NCBI GenBank assembly: GCA_964106915.2
Contig: OZ066917.1
Origin: Podarcis gaigeae
Taxonomy: Eukaryota
Strand: one strand, 5' to 3'
Length of the DNA stretch: 64,000 nt
Shown: positions 7,136-42,617 of the stretch, in pieces
How positions within the stretch are numbered: the first letter of the stretch is position 1
How the letters are laid out: each line of letters opens with the position of its first letter
The notes under the pieces: generated by a model
What the model saw: only the letters and a program-made list of their open reading frames with translations
Database searches by the model: none
What the model was told of the DNA's origin: nothing
Position numbers and translations under genes: made by a program

Positions 7136-8123
7136 TAGTTTTGAATATCAATGCATTGAGATCTGAGATCTATAGGTATAGGGCGGTATACATATTTAAT
7201 AATAATAGCGCAACCTGTGGCTCAAATTTAGCTCACCTTAACAACACCTGACATCACACTACTCAAGGGTGGGCAATCCTGCTACTTCTGAAGTAAGCCT
7301 TTTGTTTTCTCACATCTTTAACAACTAGGAAAGTAGTAATTAACAGGAAAAATCATATTGTTTTGGAACAGAAATATCACAATTTGCCTTCTTTCAGCAG
7401 TTGATTTGCTGTCCTTCCAGAGAGTATAAAACTATATAGGGCTGATAATGCAGGGTATTGTTGATTGATTTGCCCAGAAGGCTTTGGAGGAGAGTAAAGT
7501 TGGAGGAGGAGAATATCATTGAGCACACAATGTCCCAATTATTTTGCACCTCCAAAACAGTCTGACAGAAAAAAGCAGAGGGAACTTCACATTTCTCGCT
7601 CACATTCAAAATGCAGAATGGTTGGGCAGAAATCCCTGTCATGCTCAGGAAGCTTCTTACAATAGGAGAAAGGATGGCATTTGACAATGACAATCAGAAC
7701 AGCACACAGCTGCAGTTGTCCTTTCACAGTCGTCTGAACCATTTATAAAGAGAGCAATAAATATTGCAATACCTTGACAATTATTCTGCAAGAGATTGCC
7801 AAAAAGGCAGGGCTAATGTTAATTCCAAGTTTTGAGGTAGTTGTGAATTGTAGTTTGGGTAGGTTGTGGACAGTTATCAGAAAGAGAGCAGCCATTAGGT
7901 TTGGGGTGTATCTCTGCAGCCTTGCCCCCATTTCCCTGAAGCAGATGTTTATTGTGGTTGGTAGAAGCTATTCTGAAAGAGCATCCTTCAATCATTTTTG
8001 AAGAAATGAGGGCCGCAGTCACACATTACATTTAAGGCACTATGATACCACTTTGAACAGTCATGGCTTCCCTCAAAGAATTCTGAGAGGTGTAGTTTGT
8101 TAAGGGTGCTGAGAGGGTGCACT

Positions 8124-8707
8124 GTCATCATTGAAGTTGAAAATAGTAGGCTAAGTAGCAAGAAAGGTATAAACCTGCCAAGTGTTGCAATAGTTCACCC
8201 TGCTGTTTCTGAGGACATCCAGGATCTGAAATTTGGTGTGGAGTAGGATATAAGCATGGTGTTTGCTTCTTTTATCCAAAAGGCAGACGATATTCATGCT
8301 CTCAGGAAGGTGCTGGGAGAAAAGGGAAAGCACATCAAGATCACTTTCAAGATAGAAGACCACAAAGGTGTAGGTAGGTTTGTTGAGACCATAGATAGTC
8401 GTAGTTGTAGGTAGGTTTGATGATACCATTTTGGCATCATGGTAGCTTGTGGTGGTCTTGGTATTGAGATTCCTGCTGGAAAAGTCTTCCTTGCCCCCAA
8501 AATGATAATTGGTTGATGGAAAGGGTCTGGCAAGCCAATCACCTTTGCTACTCAGATGTTGGAGAGCGTGATTATGAAACCACGGCCAACATATGCAGAG
8601 GTGAGTGATGTAGCAAATGCTGCCCTGCATGGAGCTGATTGTTCTACCTCTCCAGAGAAACCACCAAAGGAGGCCACCCTCTGGAGTCTGTCCACATGCA
8701 GCATCTT
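8124..8707 (+). pseudogene. PKM: Pyruvate kinase M retrocopy fragment (exons 6-8, spliced), disabled
   Basis: Degenerate translation follows PK: EVEN..L.SKKGINLP...PAVSEDIQDLKFGVE*DISMVFASFI...RKVLGEKGKHIKI..KIE.H.GV...GIMVA.G.LGIEIPAGKVFLAPKMIIG*...[36 protein letters not shown]...[10 protein letters not shown]. No introns at junctions 8377/8378 or 8555/8556. Stops at 8244 and 8514 plus frameshifts. GEKGK and PLE..MQHL favour PKM over PKLR. Confidence 0.93.
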
Positions 8708-8820
8708 GTGAGTTATAACCATTTGATGTTAAGTGACAGTACCTGTGTACCTAGAAATATTTGCACAGCTCATGCTCTCCTACTTAACTTTCTATCTTCT
8801 CAAATACCCTCTAGATCTGG

Positions 8821-9046
8821 TTACAGATAGGTAGCCGTGTTGGTCTGCCATAGTCAAAACAAAAAAAAAATTCTTCCAGTAGCACCTTAAAGACCAACTA
8901 AGTTAGTTCTTGGTATGAGCTTTCGTGTGCATGCACACTTCTTCAGATACAGATACAGATTCAGTGTGCATGCACACGAAAGCTCATACCAAGAACTAAC
9001 TTAGTTGGTCTTTACGGTGCTACTGGAAGGAATTTTTTTGTTTTTG
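8821..9046 (-). mobile_element. Penelope-like element pseudo-LTR fragment with inverted 5' segment
   Basis: Arms of about 80 bp (about 8857-8939 vs 8964-9046) are inverted. TSD cctctagatctgg (8808-8820) / cctctagatatgg (9047-9059). Contains a hammerhead motif. Same family at 35222 and 48405. Confidence 0.82.
8913..8950 (-). ncRNA. Minimal type I hammerhead ribozyme motif
   Basis: Minus strand: GUAU-CUGAAGA-A-GUGUGC-AU-GCACAC-GAAA-GC-UC-AUAC. This gives stem I (GUAU/AUAC), the CUGANGA box, stem II, GAAA, a palindromic AGCU stem III and a CUC cleavage triplet. Confidence 0.75.
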
Positions 9047-10309
9047 CCTCTAGATATGGCTTAATGTTTTATACATGGCATGTGGCTGCCTTCTTACTAT
9101 GGCTTGCATATATGCCATAAGTCTCTCAAGCTGCCATAGACTTTTCCCCCATTAGCAGTGAAAACAAAGTGCACTGTCTACAAGTATAAAACATGGGTTT
9201 ATGCAAAGTGAGTGTGGAGCAAATTCTGAACTTTAGGGACTAGTGGTTTTGACAGCCTTATGTGGGTTCCTTCCTACTGTAGTATCTGAATTGTCCAGCT
9301 TAGAAAATTTTTATTTTGAGAACTTCAGATATCCTTGGAATTCCAATTACTGAATTGCATTAATTGTTTTGATGAATTTGTTGTTGTTTGCTTTGTTTAT
9401 ATGCTATAGTGTTTGATATTACAGTGATTGCAGTGCATGCTGTTTTTTATTACTACTGTGGTTTTTGAGAGAAGCTTTGAGCTCAACATTTGTTCTTGGG
9501 AAAGCAGAATACAAATATTAAATGAAATCAAATCCTTTCCCCCCTCACTGAGCTATAATTCCCAGAGTTCTCTGGGAAGAGGGATTGATTGTGAAACCAC
9601 TCTGGGAATTGTAGCTCTGTGCAGGGAATAAAGGTCTTCAGCTCCTAGACATCTTTGGGGAAAACCATGACTGTTTAAAGTGGTATCATTGTGCTTTAAA
9701 TGTGTATGTGGCCCATATGTGTAGGTAAAAGGGGTGTTGCATAAGCTTTGTGAGCAGCAAGCAATTGCTTGTTAATTACTTGAAAATGCCTGATCAGGCC
9801 AGTACATGAAGCTGTATGCTCATTCAGTGTTCACCATCTATGGAAACCTGCTGACTGGCATATTGTCAAGTCTACAAATGTTAGTGGGATGGATGATAAT
9901 TATTATGGTTTTTACTAAGGGTTGTTATGCTACCCCCAAAATATGGGTTTGCCCTGAAGAGCCAACCTTAAGATGCTTGTTTAAATCGCAAGCAAACGTC
10001 ACAAGAGGGGACTATTGTTACTTGAAGGAGGCAGGGCAGAGCCACACAACAGAAAAAGGCAGACGCACACACGCAGCCAGTAGCTAGGTAAAAGCAGAAT
10101 GTGGAGAGCAACAGCTGGAGAGAAGGTCCTTGGGAAACAAAGCAATAAAAGGGAGCAGGGGAGCTTGAGACACAGTCAAAAGGGAGTGTAAGTGAAGCTG
10201 AACATTTCCAGAGAGAATCTCGGATAGCTAGAAAGCAGGCAGAGGCAAGAGGCAAAGGAGTAGGCAAACAAAGACGCTGAAGGAAGAAACAGAGATAAGA
10301 GAGTGTGTG

Positions 10310-36092: not shown

Positions 36093-36900
36093 TGCGCGTC
36101 AAGGTCCCCAAGACACCCCCCCTAAAAAAAAAAACACAATGACACTTAATTTTTGTTTTTGGCATAATTTTGGCCACAACTTTATTAAAATTACAGCAGT
36201 GTGAGTGGTTGCTTAGGCATTGGTAGCGACTAACTGACCCCGCACGGGGACAGCTCTGACATTCGCACCCCCTTCAAAGTCAGAAAGGGTAAGTCACCTG
36301 GGGAGAGAGACGGGATTGGGAACCATGCCTCACCTCTCCCCCAGAATGCTCCCAGGGGCTCTTGCGTGGCCCTAGCCCCTTGCCAGGGGGTTTCGGACAA
36401 AAGCATGGTGAGCCCCTGGGTTCTTTTAATGTAAAACCCTTGCAGCAGCAGCATTTTGGAGGGGCAGGCACAGCCAAATCCATACCCCTCCACCAACCAA
36501 TTCCCAAACCAATGCCTAACCACAACCTTACAAGTTGTGACGATTTGCTACACAGTAGGCAAAAACCAAATGGCACCAGCCAATCAGCCAAATGGACAAA
36601 ATTCCTACTGGGCCCCTGCCCCAAAGTAGATGACCCCATGACAGGCATAGCAAGGTCAAGCAAACAGCCTAACATTAGGGAGGGAGGGAGGAAGGGCGGG
36701 TGATCCGAAGCACGCAGCGAAAAGAGGAAGTTCGTCGCTGCGTGCAACGTATTTAACAAATCAATAAATGGCAACATATAAATTTCCCCAGTAACAGCCC
36801 ATCCCTGCTTAAAAGATGGCCAAACTCTTTTGCCTAGTAACAGTGAGGTGTCTCGTCAGCCCCCACTGCAACACGTGTTCTCCACAAGGGAGAACACGCT
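36093..36900 (-). mobile_element. Unclassified GC/CpG-rich repeat in intron 4 (DIRS/LTR-like?)
   Basis: Minus-strand aataaagttgtggcc, internal inverted repeats and retained CpGs; boundaries approximate. Confidence 0.35.
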
Positions 36901-37954
36901 TTATAAAATAATGTCTGGAGGCAGGCAGACTTTGGCTTAAATTTGGCATCATCCCCGAGATCTTGACCTAGATCTGGAATGAGTTAAACTCTTTGGGCAA
37001 CCTGTTCCTCTAGAAATGTGTTAAGTTGATCTGATGACCCACATAATGGGTTGTGCTGATGCACACAGCAGCATCTTTGTGGTCAGATATGACAAGGTTT
37101 GCTATCCTTCATATAAATTGCAGTCCCAAAACTAAACCAAAACCAAACTTGCAACTGTTAGCCTTTAATGCTCTAACCAACCAGTTGCCAACGTTTGTAG
37201 GGTAATGACATTATTATTAATTTTATTTGTTAAATGTGTTTACCGCCCTATACCCTTAGGTCTCAGGGTGGTTCACAACATAAAAACACAAAATACATAA
37301 TAAACATGGAAACAAGAACAACCCAATAACCCCCCTCTGACCTTGAATATTTGCCAGTTGCTTCAGTAGAGGGGGTATTACTGGGCACATAGATACATGT
37401 GCAGATTGATGTGCACACACAGATATGGATATGGGTAATAAAGTTGTGCATATCTTATAGCTTGGTAGAAGCTGAAATGCCTTTATGATGCAGCATAGAT
37501 GATCCTTGTGGTCCATCCATGTCTGGCTCCTTCATTTCCTTCTCTAGCATGTGGTGCTATCATGTAGCTTCTGAAGACCCAACCCCCATTCACTATCATT
37601 AGATACTGTTTTTTTAAAATGGTCTGTATCTTATCTGTGGTGGCATCCCCACATGCAAAAGAACTTCCTCCCAGGTGATATCAGGTTTGTCCCCAAAGCA
37701 TAAATATTTAAATGAAGACTAAATGCTTTTTTTTTTTTGTTCATCTGGGCATTTGGATCATAGCTGGAATTGACTTGCAGGAGGGGCATTATTTGTTATA
37801 GATGCTGCTCATTTTATTTTGATTTTAACTATGGTTTTTATTGTTGCATATTTGTTTTATTTAGTCAGTATCTTCTGTTTGGGCCTTTCTATGGTGCATT
37901 CTTGATTGAATTCACTATTCCCTCCTTGGTTGATAGCGTACATATTATATCCTA

Positions 37955-38365
37955 GCTCAGGGGTGGGGTGGGGATCTTGGTTATGGGGCCTGATTACAGT
38001 CCTCCAGACCTTTCTATCTGGCCCTCAGGAATCTCCCTAGGCCCACACCCCACTTCAGTCCGCATCTCTCTCTGGCCCTACTTGACTGCTAGAATCAGTC
38101 CCTCCACACCCAACTATCTCCAAATCCTCCTAGCTGGAATCAGTCACTGAACTAGGATAATAGCTCTTGTTTGTCTGAGTGGAGGATGGGAAGGGGTGTG
38201 TGAGCAGAAACCACTGACTTTTGCATGGCTGGAATGGAGCCTTGTTCTACAAAGATACGATACATCCATTGTATTGCCCTGTTTTTGTCTGGCCCTGCCC
38301 ATGGCATGAAGCTCCCAGAAGGTTCCTCATAAGGGATTTTGTGTCCCTCAGACTGGAGGAGGCTG
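37955..38365. mobile_element. Old hAT-like non-autonomous element; related fragment at about 4603-4810
   Basis: Shared motifs (ggcccacacccc / ggaccacacctc; gataatagctcttg / gataataactctag; ggtgtgt). Confidence 0.45.
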
Positions 38366-39666
38366 GTGGAGCATGTGGTCAGCGGACTGGGGGGACTAGG
38401 TTACCTAAATGTTCCTGGTAAATTAGAGTATTAAAGTCTGGTGCTCCTTCCCAAAGTTTCTGCCTGGCTTAAGAAGGGAGGCGTGATGCTCATGCACACA
38501 ACATCAGCCCCCGCCCCCAAATCTCCCTCACAAGCTGAAGCCTCTGGCCCTAACTTTTGCCCTACAAAAAAATTGCTGCACACCACTGCCTCACTCTTGT
38601 AGATCTTCCCAAGACTGGCTTCACATCTCCCTGCTGGATAGTATCAATAATCTTGTTTAGATTACTTCCTTGAATCTGGAGCATTTTCTCATTGTATTAA
38701 GTTATATTTCATTATTTGTAAGCTGCTTTCAGTGCCAAGTGATAGAAATGGTCATAAGCTTTAGAAGCTACAAAACCAACCAATCAAATGAACATAGTCA
38801 GGGACCTCAGGAATACTAAACTTTACTTTTTTCCTGTTAAGCTCATGTGTCCTTTTCTGATTTGGGTGAAAAATTATATAATTGAGATGTATCATAACTT
38901 CCTTGAAAAGGTCACTTTCTGGTTCTCTCCCCGAGTGAGCTTCTAAGGTACTATCAACTTCTCAACTGAGTTCATAAACTCTCAAATGCTGTTGCAAAAT
39001 TTGAAGTGAAATTGCTCAGCAATTTACTGTAGATATTAACAAATAAACTGTGTCCCAATTCACCCATTGCTAGCTGCAGAAGCGACTCTCACATGGAGAA
39101 AGAATGCAGCCCCACCACAACACCTCTCACAAAGTGCCTGGTTCACTGCTCATCCTTAGCAGGCTGACATTGTGCTTCTAACATAGAAGATGGGAGTTGG
39201 CCAGCTCCCTAGTCTGTCTAAATAGTTGTGTCACAGCTTGGACTGACCCTGGTACTGGAAGCTGATATAAGCTCCTTCAGCCAGCTCCTGGGGATGGGGC
39301 CTAAAGGCATGGACCAAAGGGAAAGATTGTCTCCTCTGGTCAATGCCGGGGTTTTCTCTATGTGTCAAACTATTTTTACACATTTCTAAGGAGAATGTGC
39401 CATACTTTTCCTTTGAGGTTATGCTACCTACCAGTTCCTCCACCGTCCAAGTTTCTTTTGCTCCCACTGGTAACACATGAACCAGAATTATATTACTGAA
39501 AACTGCATAGATCAGCAAATACATACAACTAAACCTACACCAACATCAACTTTAAATAAGCATTTTAAAGAATTTCACCGTTGAGCATTTGAAATGCCAC
39601 CAGATATTGTCTTGTTTTAACTTGTCATCATACGGAGACAGTAATAGCTCCCTGGTTTCCCTCCAG

Positions 39667-41180: not shown

Positions 41181-41541
41181 ACATCTAATGAAGCTGAGTG
41201 TTGGACGATTTGGGACAGATAAAAGAAAGCAGTTCTTCATGCAGCTCATAGTTAAAACTATGAAACTTGATTGCATGGGAGGCAGTGATGGTCACCAATG
41301 TAGATAGCTTCATAAGATTAGATAAATTCATGGAGGAGAAGACTATTGATGGTTCTTAGCCATGATGGGTACACCTTGCCTTCACGGTTGGAGGCAGCTA
41401 TGCTTCTGAATACCAGTTGCTGAAAACCACTGGAGGGTAGAATGTTCTTATGCTTAAATCCTGTTGGTTGGTTTCCTAGTGGCATCTGTTTGACCACCAT
41501 GGGGTGGGGTGTTGGACTCAAAGGGCCCTCTTCTTATGTTA
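41181..41541 (+). mobile_element. CR1 LINE 3' end
   Basis: ORF2-end-like aatgaagctg...ggacagataaaagaaag..ttcttca...gattagataaattcatggagg and 3' UTR ending ctcttcttatgtt. Confidence 0.8.
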
Positions 41542-42617
41542 TTATATCCCCTGACTGCAGCTGGCTTCTTCTTCTTCTTGAAGGGCTTCTCTCTCTCTCT
41601 CTCTTGACCACCCCACAAAACCAAGAACATTCAGTGCTCAGTTCAAGACTGCTGTGAAACTATCAGCAGAAACTCCAAAGACTATTTCTAACTGTGAGAA
41701 GCTGACCTGACAGAAACCTCACACTAGCGGGCTAAATATTTCTAAACTGAAAATTATATTCAGCTAAGTATTTAAATGATGGTAATTGGCTGCCAACCAT
41801 CGCTTTAGTGAAAACAGGAGGAAAATCAAAGGTAACTCAGGTATTTTATGTCTCTGCCACATATACAAAAGGCGAGAGAAAAGGAGAGAGACTGTGTGTT
41901 CTTATTAAAAGTACATGGGCATACAAAGAATGGTACCTCTGTGTATTATAAAAGCATCACAATACAAAGCACATTCAGAAAGCCCTCTGAATGGCAATTT
42001 TCTTTTTTGCATAATGAGAGCTCCCCAAAGCTATGGAGAAGGTTGACATGGGGTCTCAAGTCTCCAGTAAACAGCATCTGAAGTCTCTAGTAAACAGCTC
42101 TGAAGAGGAGGGGGAGCCTATCATTGTTTTATTTGTGCCACAAACTTTTCCTGTATGACAGGAATAGCCAACGTTGTGCCCTCCAGATGATGTTGGATTA
42201 CCACTCCTGGCCCTTGACTGTGCTGGCTAGTGCTGATGGGAACTGTAGTCCTAAACAGGACACCAGGTACTCCTGCATCTATCTTTCAAGCTTTCCAGTT
42301 GAAAACAATAGATTGATTTACTGTGGTTTAGCACACAGTTCATGAAAGGACTCTGTAACAGTGCAATATTGAGATTGGCTGTGGTTGTAAACTTCTACCG
42401 GGCTGTTGTTGATTTATAAACTATCAGTGTGTACCTTACAGAGTGAGCAAACTTGGTATTCCATAAGGAAGTATTTTGAGAGTTCAGTAAAATGCAGTCT
42501 AATGTATAATAGCTGCATTTGTGCTATGCAACCTCAAACTGCCACCCTCAGGCTGCAGCCTTACACACACTTACCTGGGAGTAAATACTACTGACTGCTT
42601 TGGGGAGCTCTCCCAAG

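What the first reader, a model, noticed from the sequence alone, without database searches (positions are those of the whole stretch)
8116..9533. Semi-processed PKM retrocopy: exons 6-8 spliced, then apparently retained intron 8
Seen: PK homology is intronless across two junctions but stops exactly at ...ATG CAG CAT CTT (8707). It is followed by the canonical donor GTGAGT and about 0.6 kb of non-coding sequence (excluding the Penelope insert), ending in an A-rich stretch (acaaatattaaatgaaatcaaat, 9511-9533). The block sits between two halves of one MITE, which defines the insertion limits. Known: MQHL is the end of PKM exon 8, just before the mutually exclusive M1/M2 exons 9 and 10. Inference: this is a fossil of a germline splicing intermediate or an intronically polyadenylated PKM RNA, primed at an A-rich intronic tract. 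It would record that intron 8 is removed late.
Basis: partly seen in the sequence, partly recalled or inferred. Interest (0 to 1): 0.78.

Follow-up and report, generated by a model that had tools for sequence, protein, structure and literature searches.

The report
Half-spliced PKM retrocopy keeping intron 8
A dead copy of the pyruvate kinase M gene in a wall-lizard genome was made from an RNA that had lost introns 6 and 7 but still carried the start of intron 8; this is a clear example of a known, uncommon kind of pseudogene.

Summary

- **What it is:** Window 8116-9530 is a single-copy, disabled PKM retrocopy.
- **Spliced part:** Exons 6, 7 and 8 are joined exactly at the parental splice junctions (8377|8378 and 8555|8556).
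- **Retained intron:** After exon 8 (ends 8707) come about 0.58 kb that are colinear with the first ~560 nt of PKM intron 8 in Podarcis lilfordi, Zootoca vivipara and Lacerta agilis. BLASTN E-values are 1e-65 to 1e-103. Parental-locus contigs from the window's own species and a close relative show the same colinearity.
- **Hairpin insert:** The 226-nt hairpin at 8821-9046 is a later insertion with a 13-bp target duplication. It is absent at the same site in two sister species.
- **Ends of the insert:** The copy ends inside a parental A-rich tract. It has no poly(A) tail and no target-site duplication, and about 10 nt of the host MITE are missing. I favour internal priming on an unspliced pre-mRNA (about 0.6) over intronic polyadenylation (about 0.3).
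- **Living counterpart:** The transcript-based P. lilfordi annotation holds a 415-aa PKM isoform that reads through exon 8 into intron 8.
- **Age:** The copy is older than the Podarcis/Lacerta/Zootoca split.
- **Limits:** Semi-processed retrocopies are a known kind. "Intron 8 is removed late" rests on one molecule.

The parts
8007..8115 (+). Left half of the host MITE (pre-existing target). The terminal inverted repeat arm is 8028-8095.
   Evidence: Inverted repeat I2, 82% over 68 nt. Hundreds of other copies in DNA runs continue from 8115 with a consensus beginning TTGTTAGGAGACC (table 7).
8116..8122 (+). 5' junction letters GGTGCAC. They probably represent the first bases of exon 6 (GTGC...) after a small deletion, but this is ambiguous.
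   Evidence: Alignment to L002 36338-36350. MITE flank 8105-8112 (GGTGCTGA) is identical to the first parental bases; about 0.3% of shuffled or sampled 30-mers reach an 8-nt match.
8123..8377 (+). PKM exon 6, disabled. It carries an in-frame stop at 8244-8246 and 3-nt deletions.
   Evidence: BLASTN to L002 36349-36617, 84%, E 1e-70. Pfam PK hits. Translations.
8366..8429 (+). A tandem duplication with 37-nt spacing that spans the spliced exon 6/7 junction. The junction therefore appears twice, at 8377|8378 and 8414|8415.
   Evidence: Direct repeat D1. Comparison with the parental exon ends.
8415..8555 (+). PKM exon 7, disabled. It has a deletion of about 9 nt and a TGA at 8514-8516.
   Evidence: BLASTN to L002 37046-37169, 89%. 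The mRNA loose end at 8432 gives the parental sequence.
8556..8707 (+). PKM exon 8 (152 nt, with a 1-nt deletion that shifts the frame). It ends in ...ATGCAGCATCTT.
   Evidence: Exon 7/8 junction at 8555|8556 and exon 8 end compared with L002 37961-38113.
8708..8820 (+). Retained intron 8, part 1. It starts with the donor GTGAGT. Its last 13 nt are the left target-site duplication of the hairpin insert.
   Evidence: A continuous alignment of 8539-8821 to L002 37944-38227 crosses the exon/intron border, 82%, E 5e-71. A parental contig of organism C aligns 8554-8775 (record 13). MAFFT alignment.
8821..9046 (.).
   Evidence: Inverted repeat I1, 83-nt arms, 94%. Other copies lie in the window. Orthologous contigs of organisms C and D join about 8817 directly to about 9057 (records 12 and 19). 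The region is a gap in all parental introns.
9060..9530 (+). Retained intron 8, part 2. It ends in the parental A-rich tract, which contains ATTAAA at 9517-9522.
   Evidence: BLASTN of 9059-9527 to L002 38233-38673 (76%, E 7e-87), L004 (78%, E 2e-98) and L005 (79%, E 8e-103). Same-species parental contigs cover 9075-9530, and record 7 runs on unaligned after 9530.
9531..9717 (+). Right half of the host MITE. The terminal inverted repeat arm is 9636-9703. About 10 nt of the MITE consensus are missing at the insertion point.
   Evidence: Intact copies carry 19-20 nt between 8115 and 9541/9542; only 10 nt remain here.

Best explanation
This is a semi-processed PKM retrocopy. A PKM pre-mRNA molecule had already lost introns 6 and 7, and probably intron 5, but still carried intron 8, the intron that precedes the mutually exclusive exons 9 and 10. 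A retroelement reverse transcriptase copied this RNA in the germline of an ancestral lacertid. Copying did not start at a poly(A) tail. It started inside intron 8, about 0.57 kb downstream of exon 8, at an A-rich tract, probably through a few bases of pairing (AAUC) with the broken target DNA. It stopped or was joined at the exon 5/6 border. The cDNA was integrated into a MITE with loss of about 10 nt of target and no target-site duplication. The copy then decayed, acquiring stops, frameshifts and a 37-nt tandem duplication, and in one lineage it received a hairpin repeat insertion. Shown here: the RNA origin, the retained intron 8 segment, the absence of a tail and of a target duplication, single-copy status, and sharing among four species. 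Inferred: internal priming, the enzyme involved, and germline timing.
For: Two introns are removed exactly and the sequence continues colinearly into intron 8 in three lacertid PKM genes. Parental contigs from the same species and from organism C show the same: record 13 aligns from the first base of exon 8 through the border into the intron, and records 4, 5, 7 and 14 cover 9075-9530. There is no hit to exons 9 or 10. The last letters of the insert match parental intron sequence (ATTAAAT.AAA..), after which the MITE resumes, so no A-run is present. The MITE consensus from hundreds of copies shows a deletion of about 10 nt and no duplication. Depth of 15-24 equals the locus plus the parent only, so the composite element was never amplified. 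The P. lilfordi isoform P0297 ends in MQHL followed by 39 residues, which is the exact read-through of intron 8. That annotation added its isoforms from RNA-seq and Iso-Seq transcripts (PMC10214862). RNA reads with parental letters reach into 8732-8795 at about 15% of the exon 8 depth.
Against: An original poly(A) tail could have been lost in the tens of millions of years since insertion. ATTAAA lies 8-12 nt before the end, so a polyadenylated intronic isoform is not excluded. The inferred nick site (GATT/CT on the bottom strand) is a poor L1 endonuclease site, so the enzymology is open. The 5' end sits at the exon 5/6 border and repeats an 8-nt match with the target. A simple truncation model does not explain this.
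Confidence: 0.6

Rival explanations
1. The copy has the same RNA origin, but the template was a truncated PKM transcript cleaved and polyadenylated inside intron 8 after ATTAAA. It was inserted by ordinary poly(A)-primed reverse transcription, and the tail has since eroded.
For: ATTAAA at 9517-9522 is shared by the retrocopy and P. lilfordi. A published human case has this architecture: TMF1 exons 1-8 with part of intron 8, an alternative poly(A) signal and a 100-nt tail (PMC4151081). The annotated intron 8 read-through isoform P0297 could end there.
Against: No A-run is left, although substitution divergence is only about 17%. The copy ends about 7-12 nt after the hexamer, closer than usual cleavage. 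The hexamer is altered in Zootoca and Lacerta. There is no target-site duplication. No RNA read ends or loose A-runs were reported near 9530, although mapping is weak there.
Confidence: 0.3
2. The block was captured at the DNA level into the MITE, by Pack-TIR-type gap filling or template switching during break repair, from a semi-processed PKM copy that already existed elsewhere.
For: The block lies between the two halves of a TIR element, without a target duplication and with a small deletion, as in the single-copy Pack-TIRs formed by gap filling (PMC8277862). There are short identities at both junctions.
Against: No third PKM-like copy is seen. Depth over the exons equals this locus plus the intron-containing parent in three species. 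The parental gene has introns 6 and 7, so a direct genomic donor is excluded. This reading only moves the retroposition step to an unseen locus.
Confidence: 0.05
3. The retrocopy is an ordinary processed pseudogene truncated at exon 8, and the downstream DNA is unrelated. GTGAGT is then chance or a remnant of exon 9/10.
For: None after testing.
Against: There is colinear similarity over about 580 nt to intron 8 of three lacertids, with E-values down to 1e-103, and weaker colinearity to Phrynosoma.
Confidence: 0.01

Closest known systems
Human TMF1 semi-processed pseudogene inserted in CYBB (as reviewed in PMC4151081)
   Same: It is 3'-truncated relative to the full mRNA. Upstream exons are spliced, and the copy ends within a retained intron (by coincidence also numbered intron 8). 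It was made from an incompletely processed transcript.
   Different: The TMF1 copy has an alternative poly(A) signal and a 100-nt tail, begins at exon 1 and also retains intron 7. The lizard copy has no tail and no target duplication, begins at exon 6, and is ancient and fixed.
Rodent preproinsulin I (Ins1), the classic semi-processed retrogene (PMC4151081, PMC3449122)
   Same: It is a retrocopy of a partly spliced pre-mRNA that keeps one parental intron.
   Different: Ins1 is complete, has a tail and flanking repeats, and is functional. The lizard copy is an internal fragment and is dead.
Mosquito Mhc3/Mhc4 'partially processed' copies of a gene with mutually exclusive exons (PMC2257972)
   Same: In both cases a gene with mutually exclusive exons left a genomic copy that was read as a snapshot of the order of splicing.
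   Different: In the mosquito copies the alternative exons were resolved first and the constitutive introns were kept. Here the constitutive introns were removed and the intron before the alternative exons was kept.
Pack-TIRs / Pack-MULEs (PMC8277862)
   Same: A gene fragment is flanked by the two ends of a TIR element, and it is single-copy.
   Different: Pack-TIRs are DNA-level copies, and that study's pipeline deliberately discarded intronless captured copies of multi-exon parental genes as retroduplicates. Here two introns are removed exactly, so an RNA intermediate is required and the MITE is simply the target.
Endonuclease-independent or otherwise non-canonical LINE-mediated insertions (my own knowledge, not tested here)
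   Same: No target-site duplication, a small target deletion, no poly(A), and short identities at the junctions.
   Different: The enzyme and the state of the target DNA cannot be determined from sequence. Canonical insertions with target deletions also occur.

Membership tests
Semi-processed (partially processed) retrocopy | Derived from a multi-exon parental gene at another locus | tested here: met
   The PKM genes of P. lilfordi, Zootoca and Lacerta carry the same exons with introns. In DNA runs the parental contigs are distinct from the contigs of this locus.
Semi-processed (partially processed) retrocopy | At least one parental intron removed exactly at the splice junctions | tested here: met
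   Introns 6 and 7 are absent, and the junctions at 8377|8378 and 8555|8556 match the parental exon ends base for base.
Semi-processed (partially processed) retrocopy | At least part of one parental intron retained, colinear with the parent and starting at its donor | tested here: met
   8708-8820 plus 9060-9530 correspond to the first ~560 nt of the 3389-nt intron 8.
Semi-processed (partially processed) retrocopy | Poly(A) tail and flanking direct repeats (features of the textbook scheme) | tested here: not met
   There is no A-run after the parental letters. The MITE consensus shows a deletion of about 10 nt and no duplication. These features describe the usual insertion route, not the RNA origin.
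Canonical L1-type processed pseudogene | All introns lacking, 3' end at the mRNA poly(A) site, A-tail, 7-20 bp target duplication, TT/AAAA-like target | tested here: not met
   An intron 8 segment is kept. Exons 9-12 and the 3' UTR are absent. There is no tail and no duplication, and the target reads GAGAG...AATCC.
Pack-TIR / transduplicated gene fragment | DNA-level copy of the parental locus (introns kept), often amplified together with the element | tested here: not met
   Two introns are removed exactly. Depth of 15-24 contrasts with about 60,000 for the MITE arms, so the composite is single-copy.
Endonuclease-independent LINE insertion / cDNA capture at a break | No target duplication, target deletion, 3' end not at poly(A), junction microhomology | tested here: inconclusive
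   The first three features are present. The microhomology is suggestive only: AATC at the 3' junction, and an 8-nt identity 4-11 nt upstream of the 5' junction with p about 0.003, found post hoc. The enzymology cannot be tested with these tools.

The most novel reading that the evidence does not exclude
The copy may not be a product of ordinary LINE target-primed insertion. It could be pre-mRNA-derived cDNA captured during repair of a DNA break inside a MITE, with both ends set by short identities to the target: GGTGCTGA at the exon 6 start and AATC in the intron 8 A-rich tract. Together with the annotated read-through isoforms, it would then be a fossil tens of millions of years old showing that the introns around the PKM mutually exclusive exons have long been the slow ones in the lacertid germline.
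Probability: 0.2. Interest if true: 0.45.

Novelty: new member of a known kind. Interest (0 to 1): 0.3.

Why it matters
Semi-processed retrocopies are rare natural snapshots of splicing order in germline cells. This one captures PKM, a textbook case of mutually exclusive splicing, with the constitutive introns 6 and 7 gone and the intron upstream of the regulated exons still present. That matches intron 8 read-through transcripts annotated today in a congener. It is also a clean reptile example of a tail-less retrocopy without a target-site duplication, which is useful for surveys of non-canonical retroposition outside mammals. It is a single dead copy with no sign of expression or function, so it has value as an illustration and a dating marker rather than as new biology.

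Tried and rejected
- **Anolis comparison:** Comparing first with the Anolis carolinensis PKM gene (L001) gave only 17 nt of similarity past exon 8. This was uninformative because the species is too distant. Lacertid loci were needed.
- **Failed locus look-ups:** Six look-ups by exact protein found nothing.
- **Other copies in the window:** No second copy of the MITE or of the intron segment exists in the window.
- **Rfam:** At E up to 1, Rfam finds only hairpin-driven sub-threshold microRNA-like matches on the insert and no hammerhead family.
- **Coding read-through:** I considered a conserved coding read-through of intron 8. The frame stays open for 39 codons in lacertids and 31 in Phrynosoma, to a homologous TAG. 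However, the reading frames differ across the indels, so I found no protein-level conservation and rejected it (my reading of the alignment).
- **Circular RNA or lariat templates:** Rejected. There is no back-splice junction and no intron 5 tail upstream of exon 6.
- **Pack-TIR capture:** Rejected (see rival explanations).
- **Earlier scan notes:** They held nothing on PKM.
- **Method notes:** The 147 N in the window were not touched.
Full report
**1. The observation**

Window 8118-8711 translates into four stop-free pieces. All four hit the Pfam pyruvate kinase barrel domain in order, at profile positions 146-312. A 55-residue piece scores 60.7 bits against solved PKM structures and 41 bits against PKLR, so the parent is PKM.

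The terminal inverted repeats of a MITE flank the block at 8028-8095 and 9636-9703. The 8820-9058 region is a hairpin repeat with other copies in the window. The rest of 8708-9533 is unique within the window.

**2. Getting the parental gene**

A profile-free search with one pseudogene piece returned a full-length vertebrate PKM. A word search with that protein listed squamate PKM proteins, and their cluster members were named. Exact look-ups returned five PKM genomic loci:
- Anolis carolinensis, L001
- Podarcis lilfordi, L002
- Phrynosoma platyrhinos, L003
- Zootoca vivipara, L004
- Lacerta agilis, L005

tblastn places the coding exons on L002 as follows:
- exon 6 at 36339-36610
- exon 7 at 37017-37169
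- exon 8 at 37961-38113
- the two tandem homologous exons 9 and 10 at 41503-41670 and 42194-42361

This confirms that MQHL ends exon 8, just before the mutually exclusive pair.

**3. The decisive comparison**

BLASTN of window 8000-9720 against L002 gives these matches:

| Window | L002 | Identity | E-value |
|---|---|---|---|
| 8123-8385 | 36349-36617 | 84% | 1e-70 |
| 8432-8555 | 37046-37169 | 89% | 7e-35 |
| 8539-8821 | 37944-38227 | 82% | 5e-71 |
| 9059-9527 | 38233-38673 | 76% | 7e-87 |

The third match runs straight through the exon 8 / intron 8 border. The fourth continues colinearly on the other side of the hairpin insert. Zootoca and Lacerta give the same picture, with E-values down to 1e-103. 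Phrynosoma gives a weak colinear match (61%). Anolis gives only the first 17 intron bases.

The junctions match the parental exon ends base for base. Introns 6 (406 nt) and 7 (791 nt) are absent. Nothing matches exons 9 or 10.

The multiple alignment of the contiguous exon 8 plus intron 8 block shows the hairpin as a clean gap in all parents. Homology ends at about 9529/9530, inside the parental tract containing ATTAAAT.AAA.

**4. Evidence from the same species**

Four coded species labels hold the 8116-9533 stretch at 0.57-0.82 of its sampled words. Contigs of three of them (organisms A, C and D) were laid on window 7900-9800 at 80% or more likeness. They show the following.

- **(a) Sharing and the hairpin.** Orthologous contigs carry the retrocopy with about 1% difference. 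In organisms C and D these contigs join about 8817 directly to about 9057. The hairpin is therefore a later, lineage-specific insertion. Its 13-nt target duplication lies at 8808-8820 and 9047-9059.
- **(b) Parental contigs.** A separate set of contigs, about 80-88% alike, comes from the intron-containing parent. Record 13 of organism C aligns only from the first base of exon 8 (its upstream 209 nt are unaligned intron 7), crosses the border and goes 68 nt into the intron. Records 4, 5, 7 and 14 cover 9075-9530, and record 7 continues unaligned for more than 2 kb after 9530.
- **(c) Copy number.** Depth over the PKM part (15-24) equals this locus plus the parent. The MITE arms reach about 60,000 and the hairpin more than 10^6. 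The composite is single-copy.
- **(d) MITE consensus.** Other MITE copies read ...GGTGCTGAGAG, then TTGTTAGGAGACCCCTATT, then CCCCTCAC.... The host MITE has therefore lost about 10 nt at the insertion point, and there is no target-site duplication.

**5. RNA**

In one stranded RNA run of organism C, all reads over the exons carry the parental letters (for example 313 of 314 reads at 8228). They are PKM mRNA, and the retrocopy itself is not seen to be expressed.

Reads with 14 or more differences, and therefore parental, extend into 8732-8795. Their depth is 5.6, against 37-53 over exon 8. This is weak evidence that intron 8 is present in some RNA molecules. No control intron could be measured on this stretch.

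Independently, the P. lilfordi protein P0297 (415 aa) ends in MQHL followed by 39 residues. These are the exact read-through translation of L002 38114-38230. The retrocopy has the homologous read-through frame. That annotation added alternative forms from Illumina and Iso-Seq transcripts through PASA (PMC10214862). Two 432-aa isoforms stop right after exon 9 or exon 10, which suggests read-through into introns 9 and 10 as well. That last point is my inference.

**6. The ends of the insert**

*3' end.* The last letters are parental intron sequence and then the MITE resumes at AATCC. There is no A-run. ATTAAA lies at 9517-9522, only 8-12 nt from the end, and it is altered in Zootoca and Lacerta. 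I therefore favour internal priming on the A-rich tract, possibly with AAUC pairing to the target end. Loss of a tail over this time span cannot be excluded.

*5' end.* Certain homology begins at 8123, which is exon 6 base 11. The seven letters before it (GGTGCAC) can be read as exon 6 bases 1-4 plus a small deletion. The copy therefore starts within 0-10 nt of the exon 5/6 border.

The MITE flank 8105-8112 (GGTGCTGA) is identical to the first parental bases. About 0.3% of shuffled flanks or of window 30-mers reach such a match. This is a post hoc observation. It suggests joining assisted by microhomology, but the observed junction is not the simple product of that model. I leave it unexplained.

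**7. Age**

Substitution distance from the retrocopy to the lacertid parents is 0.16-0.18, both in exon 8 and in the intron segment. The three parents differ from each other by 0.034-0.045 in the intron.

A maximum-likelihood tree of the contiguous block places the retrocopy outside (Podarcis,(Zootoca,Lacerta)). Bootstrap support for that clade is 85, the retrocopy branch is 0.18 and the parental stem is 0.038. The insertion therefore predates the split of these genera. It is several-fold older, which means tens of millions of years; I have no calibration.

The parental side evolves about three times more slowly. This fits the wide alignability of PKM introns between Podarcis and iguanians.

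**8. What is known**

- Semi-processed retrocopies are an established class. Examples are Ins1 and the TMF1 insertion in CYBB, which holds exons 1-8 with part of intron 8, an alternative poly(A) signal and a 100-nt tail (PMC4151081; PMC3449122).
- A partially processed copy of a gene with mutually exclusive exons has been used before to argue for an order of splicing (PMC2257972).
- Gene fragments inside TIR elements are known as Pack-TIRs, but those are DNA-level copies, and that study's pipeline discarded intronless captured copies of multi-exon parental genes as retroduplicates (PMC8277862).

This case is a new member of the known kind. Its unusual features are the missing tail, the missing target duplication and the small target deletion.

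**9. Verdict**

| Claim | Assessment |
|---|---|
| Observation | Confirmed |
| Retained intron 8 | Supported; core claim about 0.95 |
| Internal priming | About 0.6 |
| Intronic polyadenylation | About 0.3 |
| "Intron 8 is removed late" | Plausible and consistent with annotated read-through isoforms, but not established by one molecule |
| Interest | Low to moderate |

Noticed in passing
window 8821-9046 (target-site duplication at 8808-8820 and 9047-9059): This hairpin repeat is present in the window's species (organism A) but absent at the orthologous site in organisms C and D, so it is a recent, lineage-specific or polymorphic insertion. Its summed k-mer depth exceeds 10^6 against about 10 for single-copy DNA, so the family is extremely abundant. 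It carries a CTGAAGA...GAAA core on the minus strand, but Rfam reports no hammerhead family at E up to 1.
   Followed up: partly
window 8366-8429: A tandem duplication with 37-nt spacing spans the spliced exon 6/7 junction, so the junction occurs twice. It arose after retroposition and adds a frameshift.
   Followed up: yes
window 8105-8112 versus L002 36338-36345: There is an 8-nt identity (GGTGCTGA) between the MITE flank, 4-11 nt upstream of the insert, and the first bases of the copied segment at the exon 5/6 border. About 0.3% of controls reach such a match. The retrocopy 5' end coincides with an exon boundary to within 10 nt. No simple joining model reproduces the observed junction.
   Followed up: partly
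L002 (P. lilfordi PKM), proteins P0297, P0294, P0295: The transcript-based annotation holds a 415-aa isoform that reads through into intron 8. It also holds two 432-aa isoforms that stop right after exon 9 or exon 10. This suggests that all three introns around the mutually exclusive exons are retained in some transcripts.
   Followed up: partly
L002 35000-45540 versus L003 and L001: PKM introns are widely alignable between Podarcis and the iguanians Phrynosoma and Anolis. The best block is L002 40408-42645, covering the 3' part of intron 8, exon 9, intron 9, exon 10 and the start of intron 10. It is 72% identical over 2.4 kb to Phrynosoma. It is a candidate set of conserved splicing-control sequences.
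   Followed up: no
window 8007-8115 and 9531-9717: The host MITE family is very abundant (summed depth about 60,000 against about 10 for single-copy DNA). A diverged relative lies in an upstream intron of the 569-aa PKM gene model of P. lilfordi (L002 8235-8380).
   Followed up: partly
window 8130: The best DNA holder of the window's species (run X1) reads T where the window has A. That run is therefore either not from the assembled individual or the site is polymorphic.
   Followed up: no
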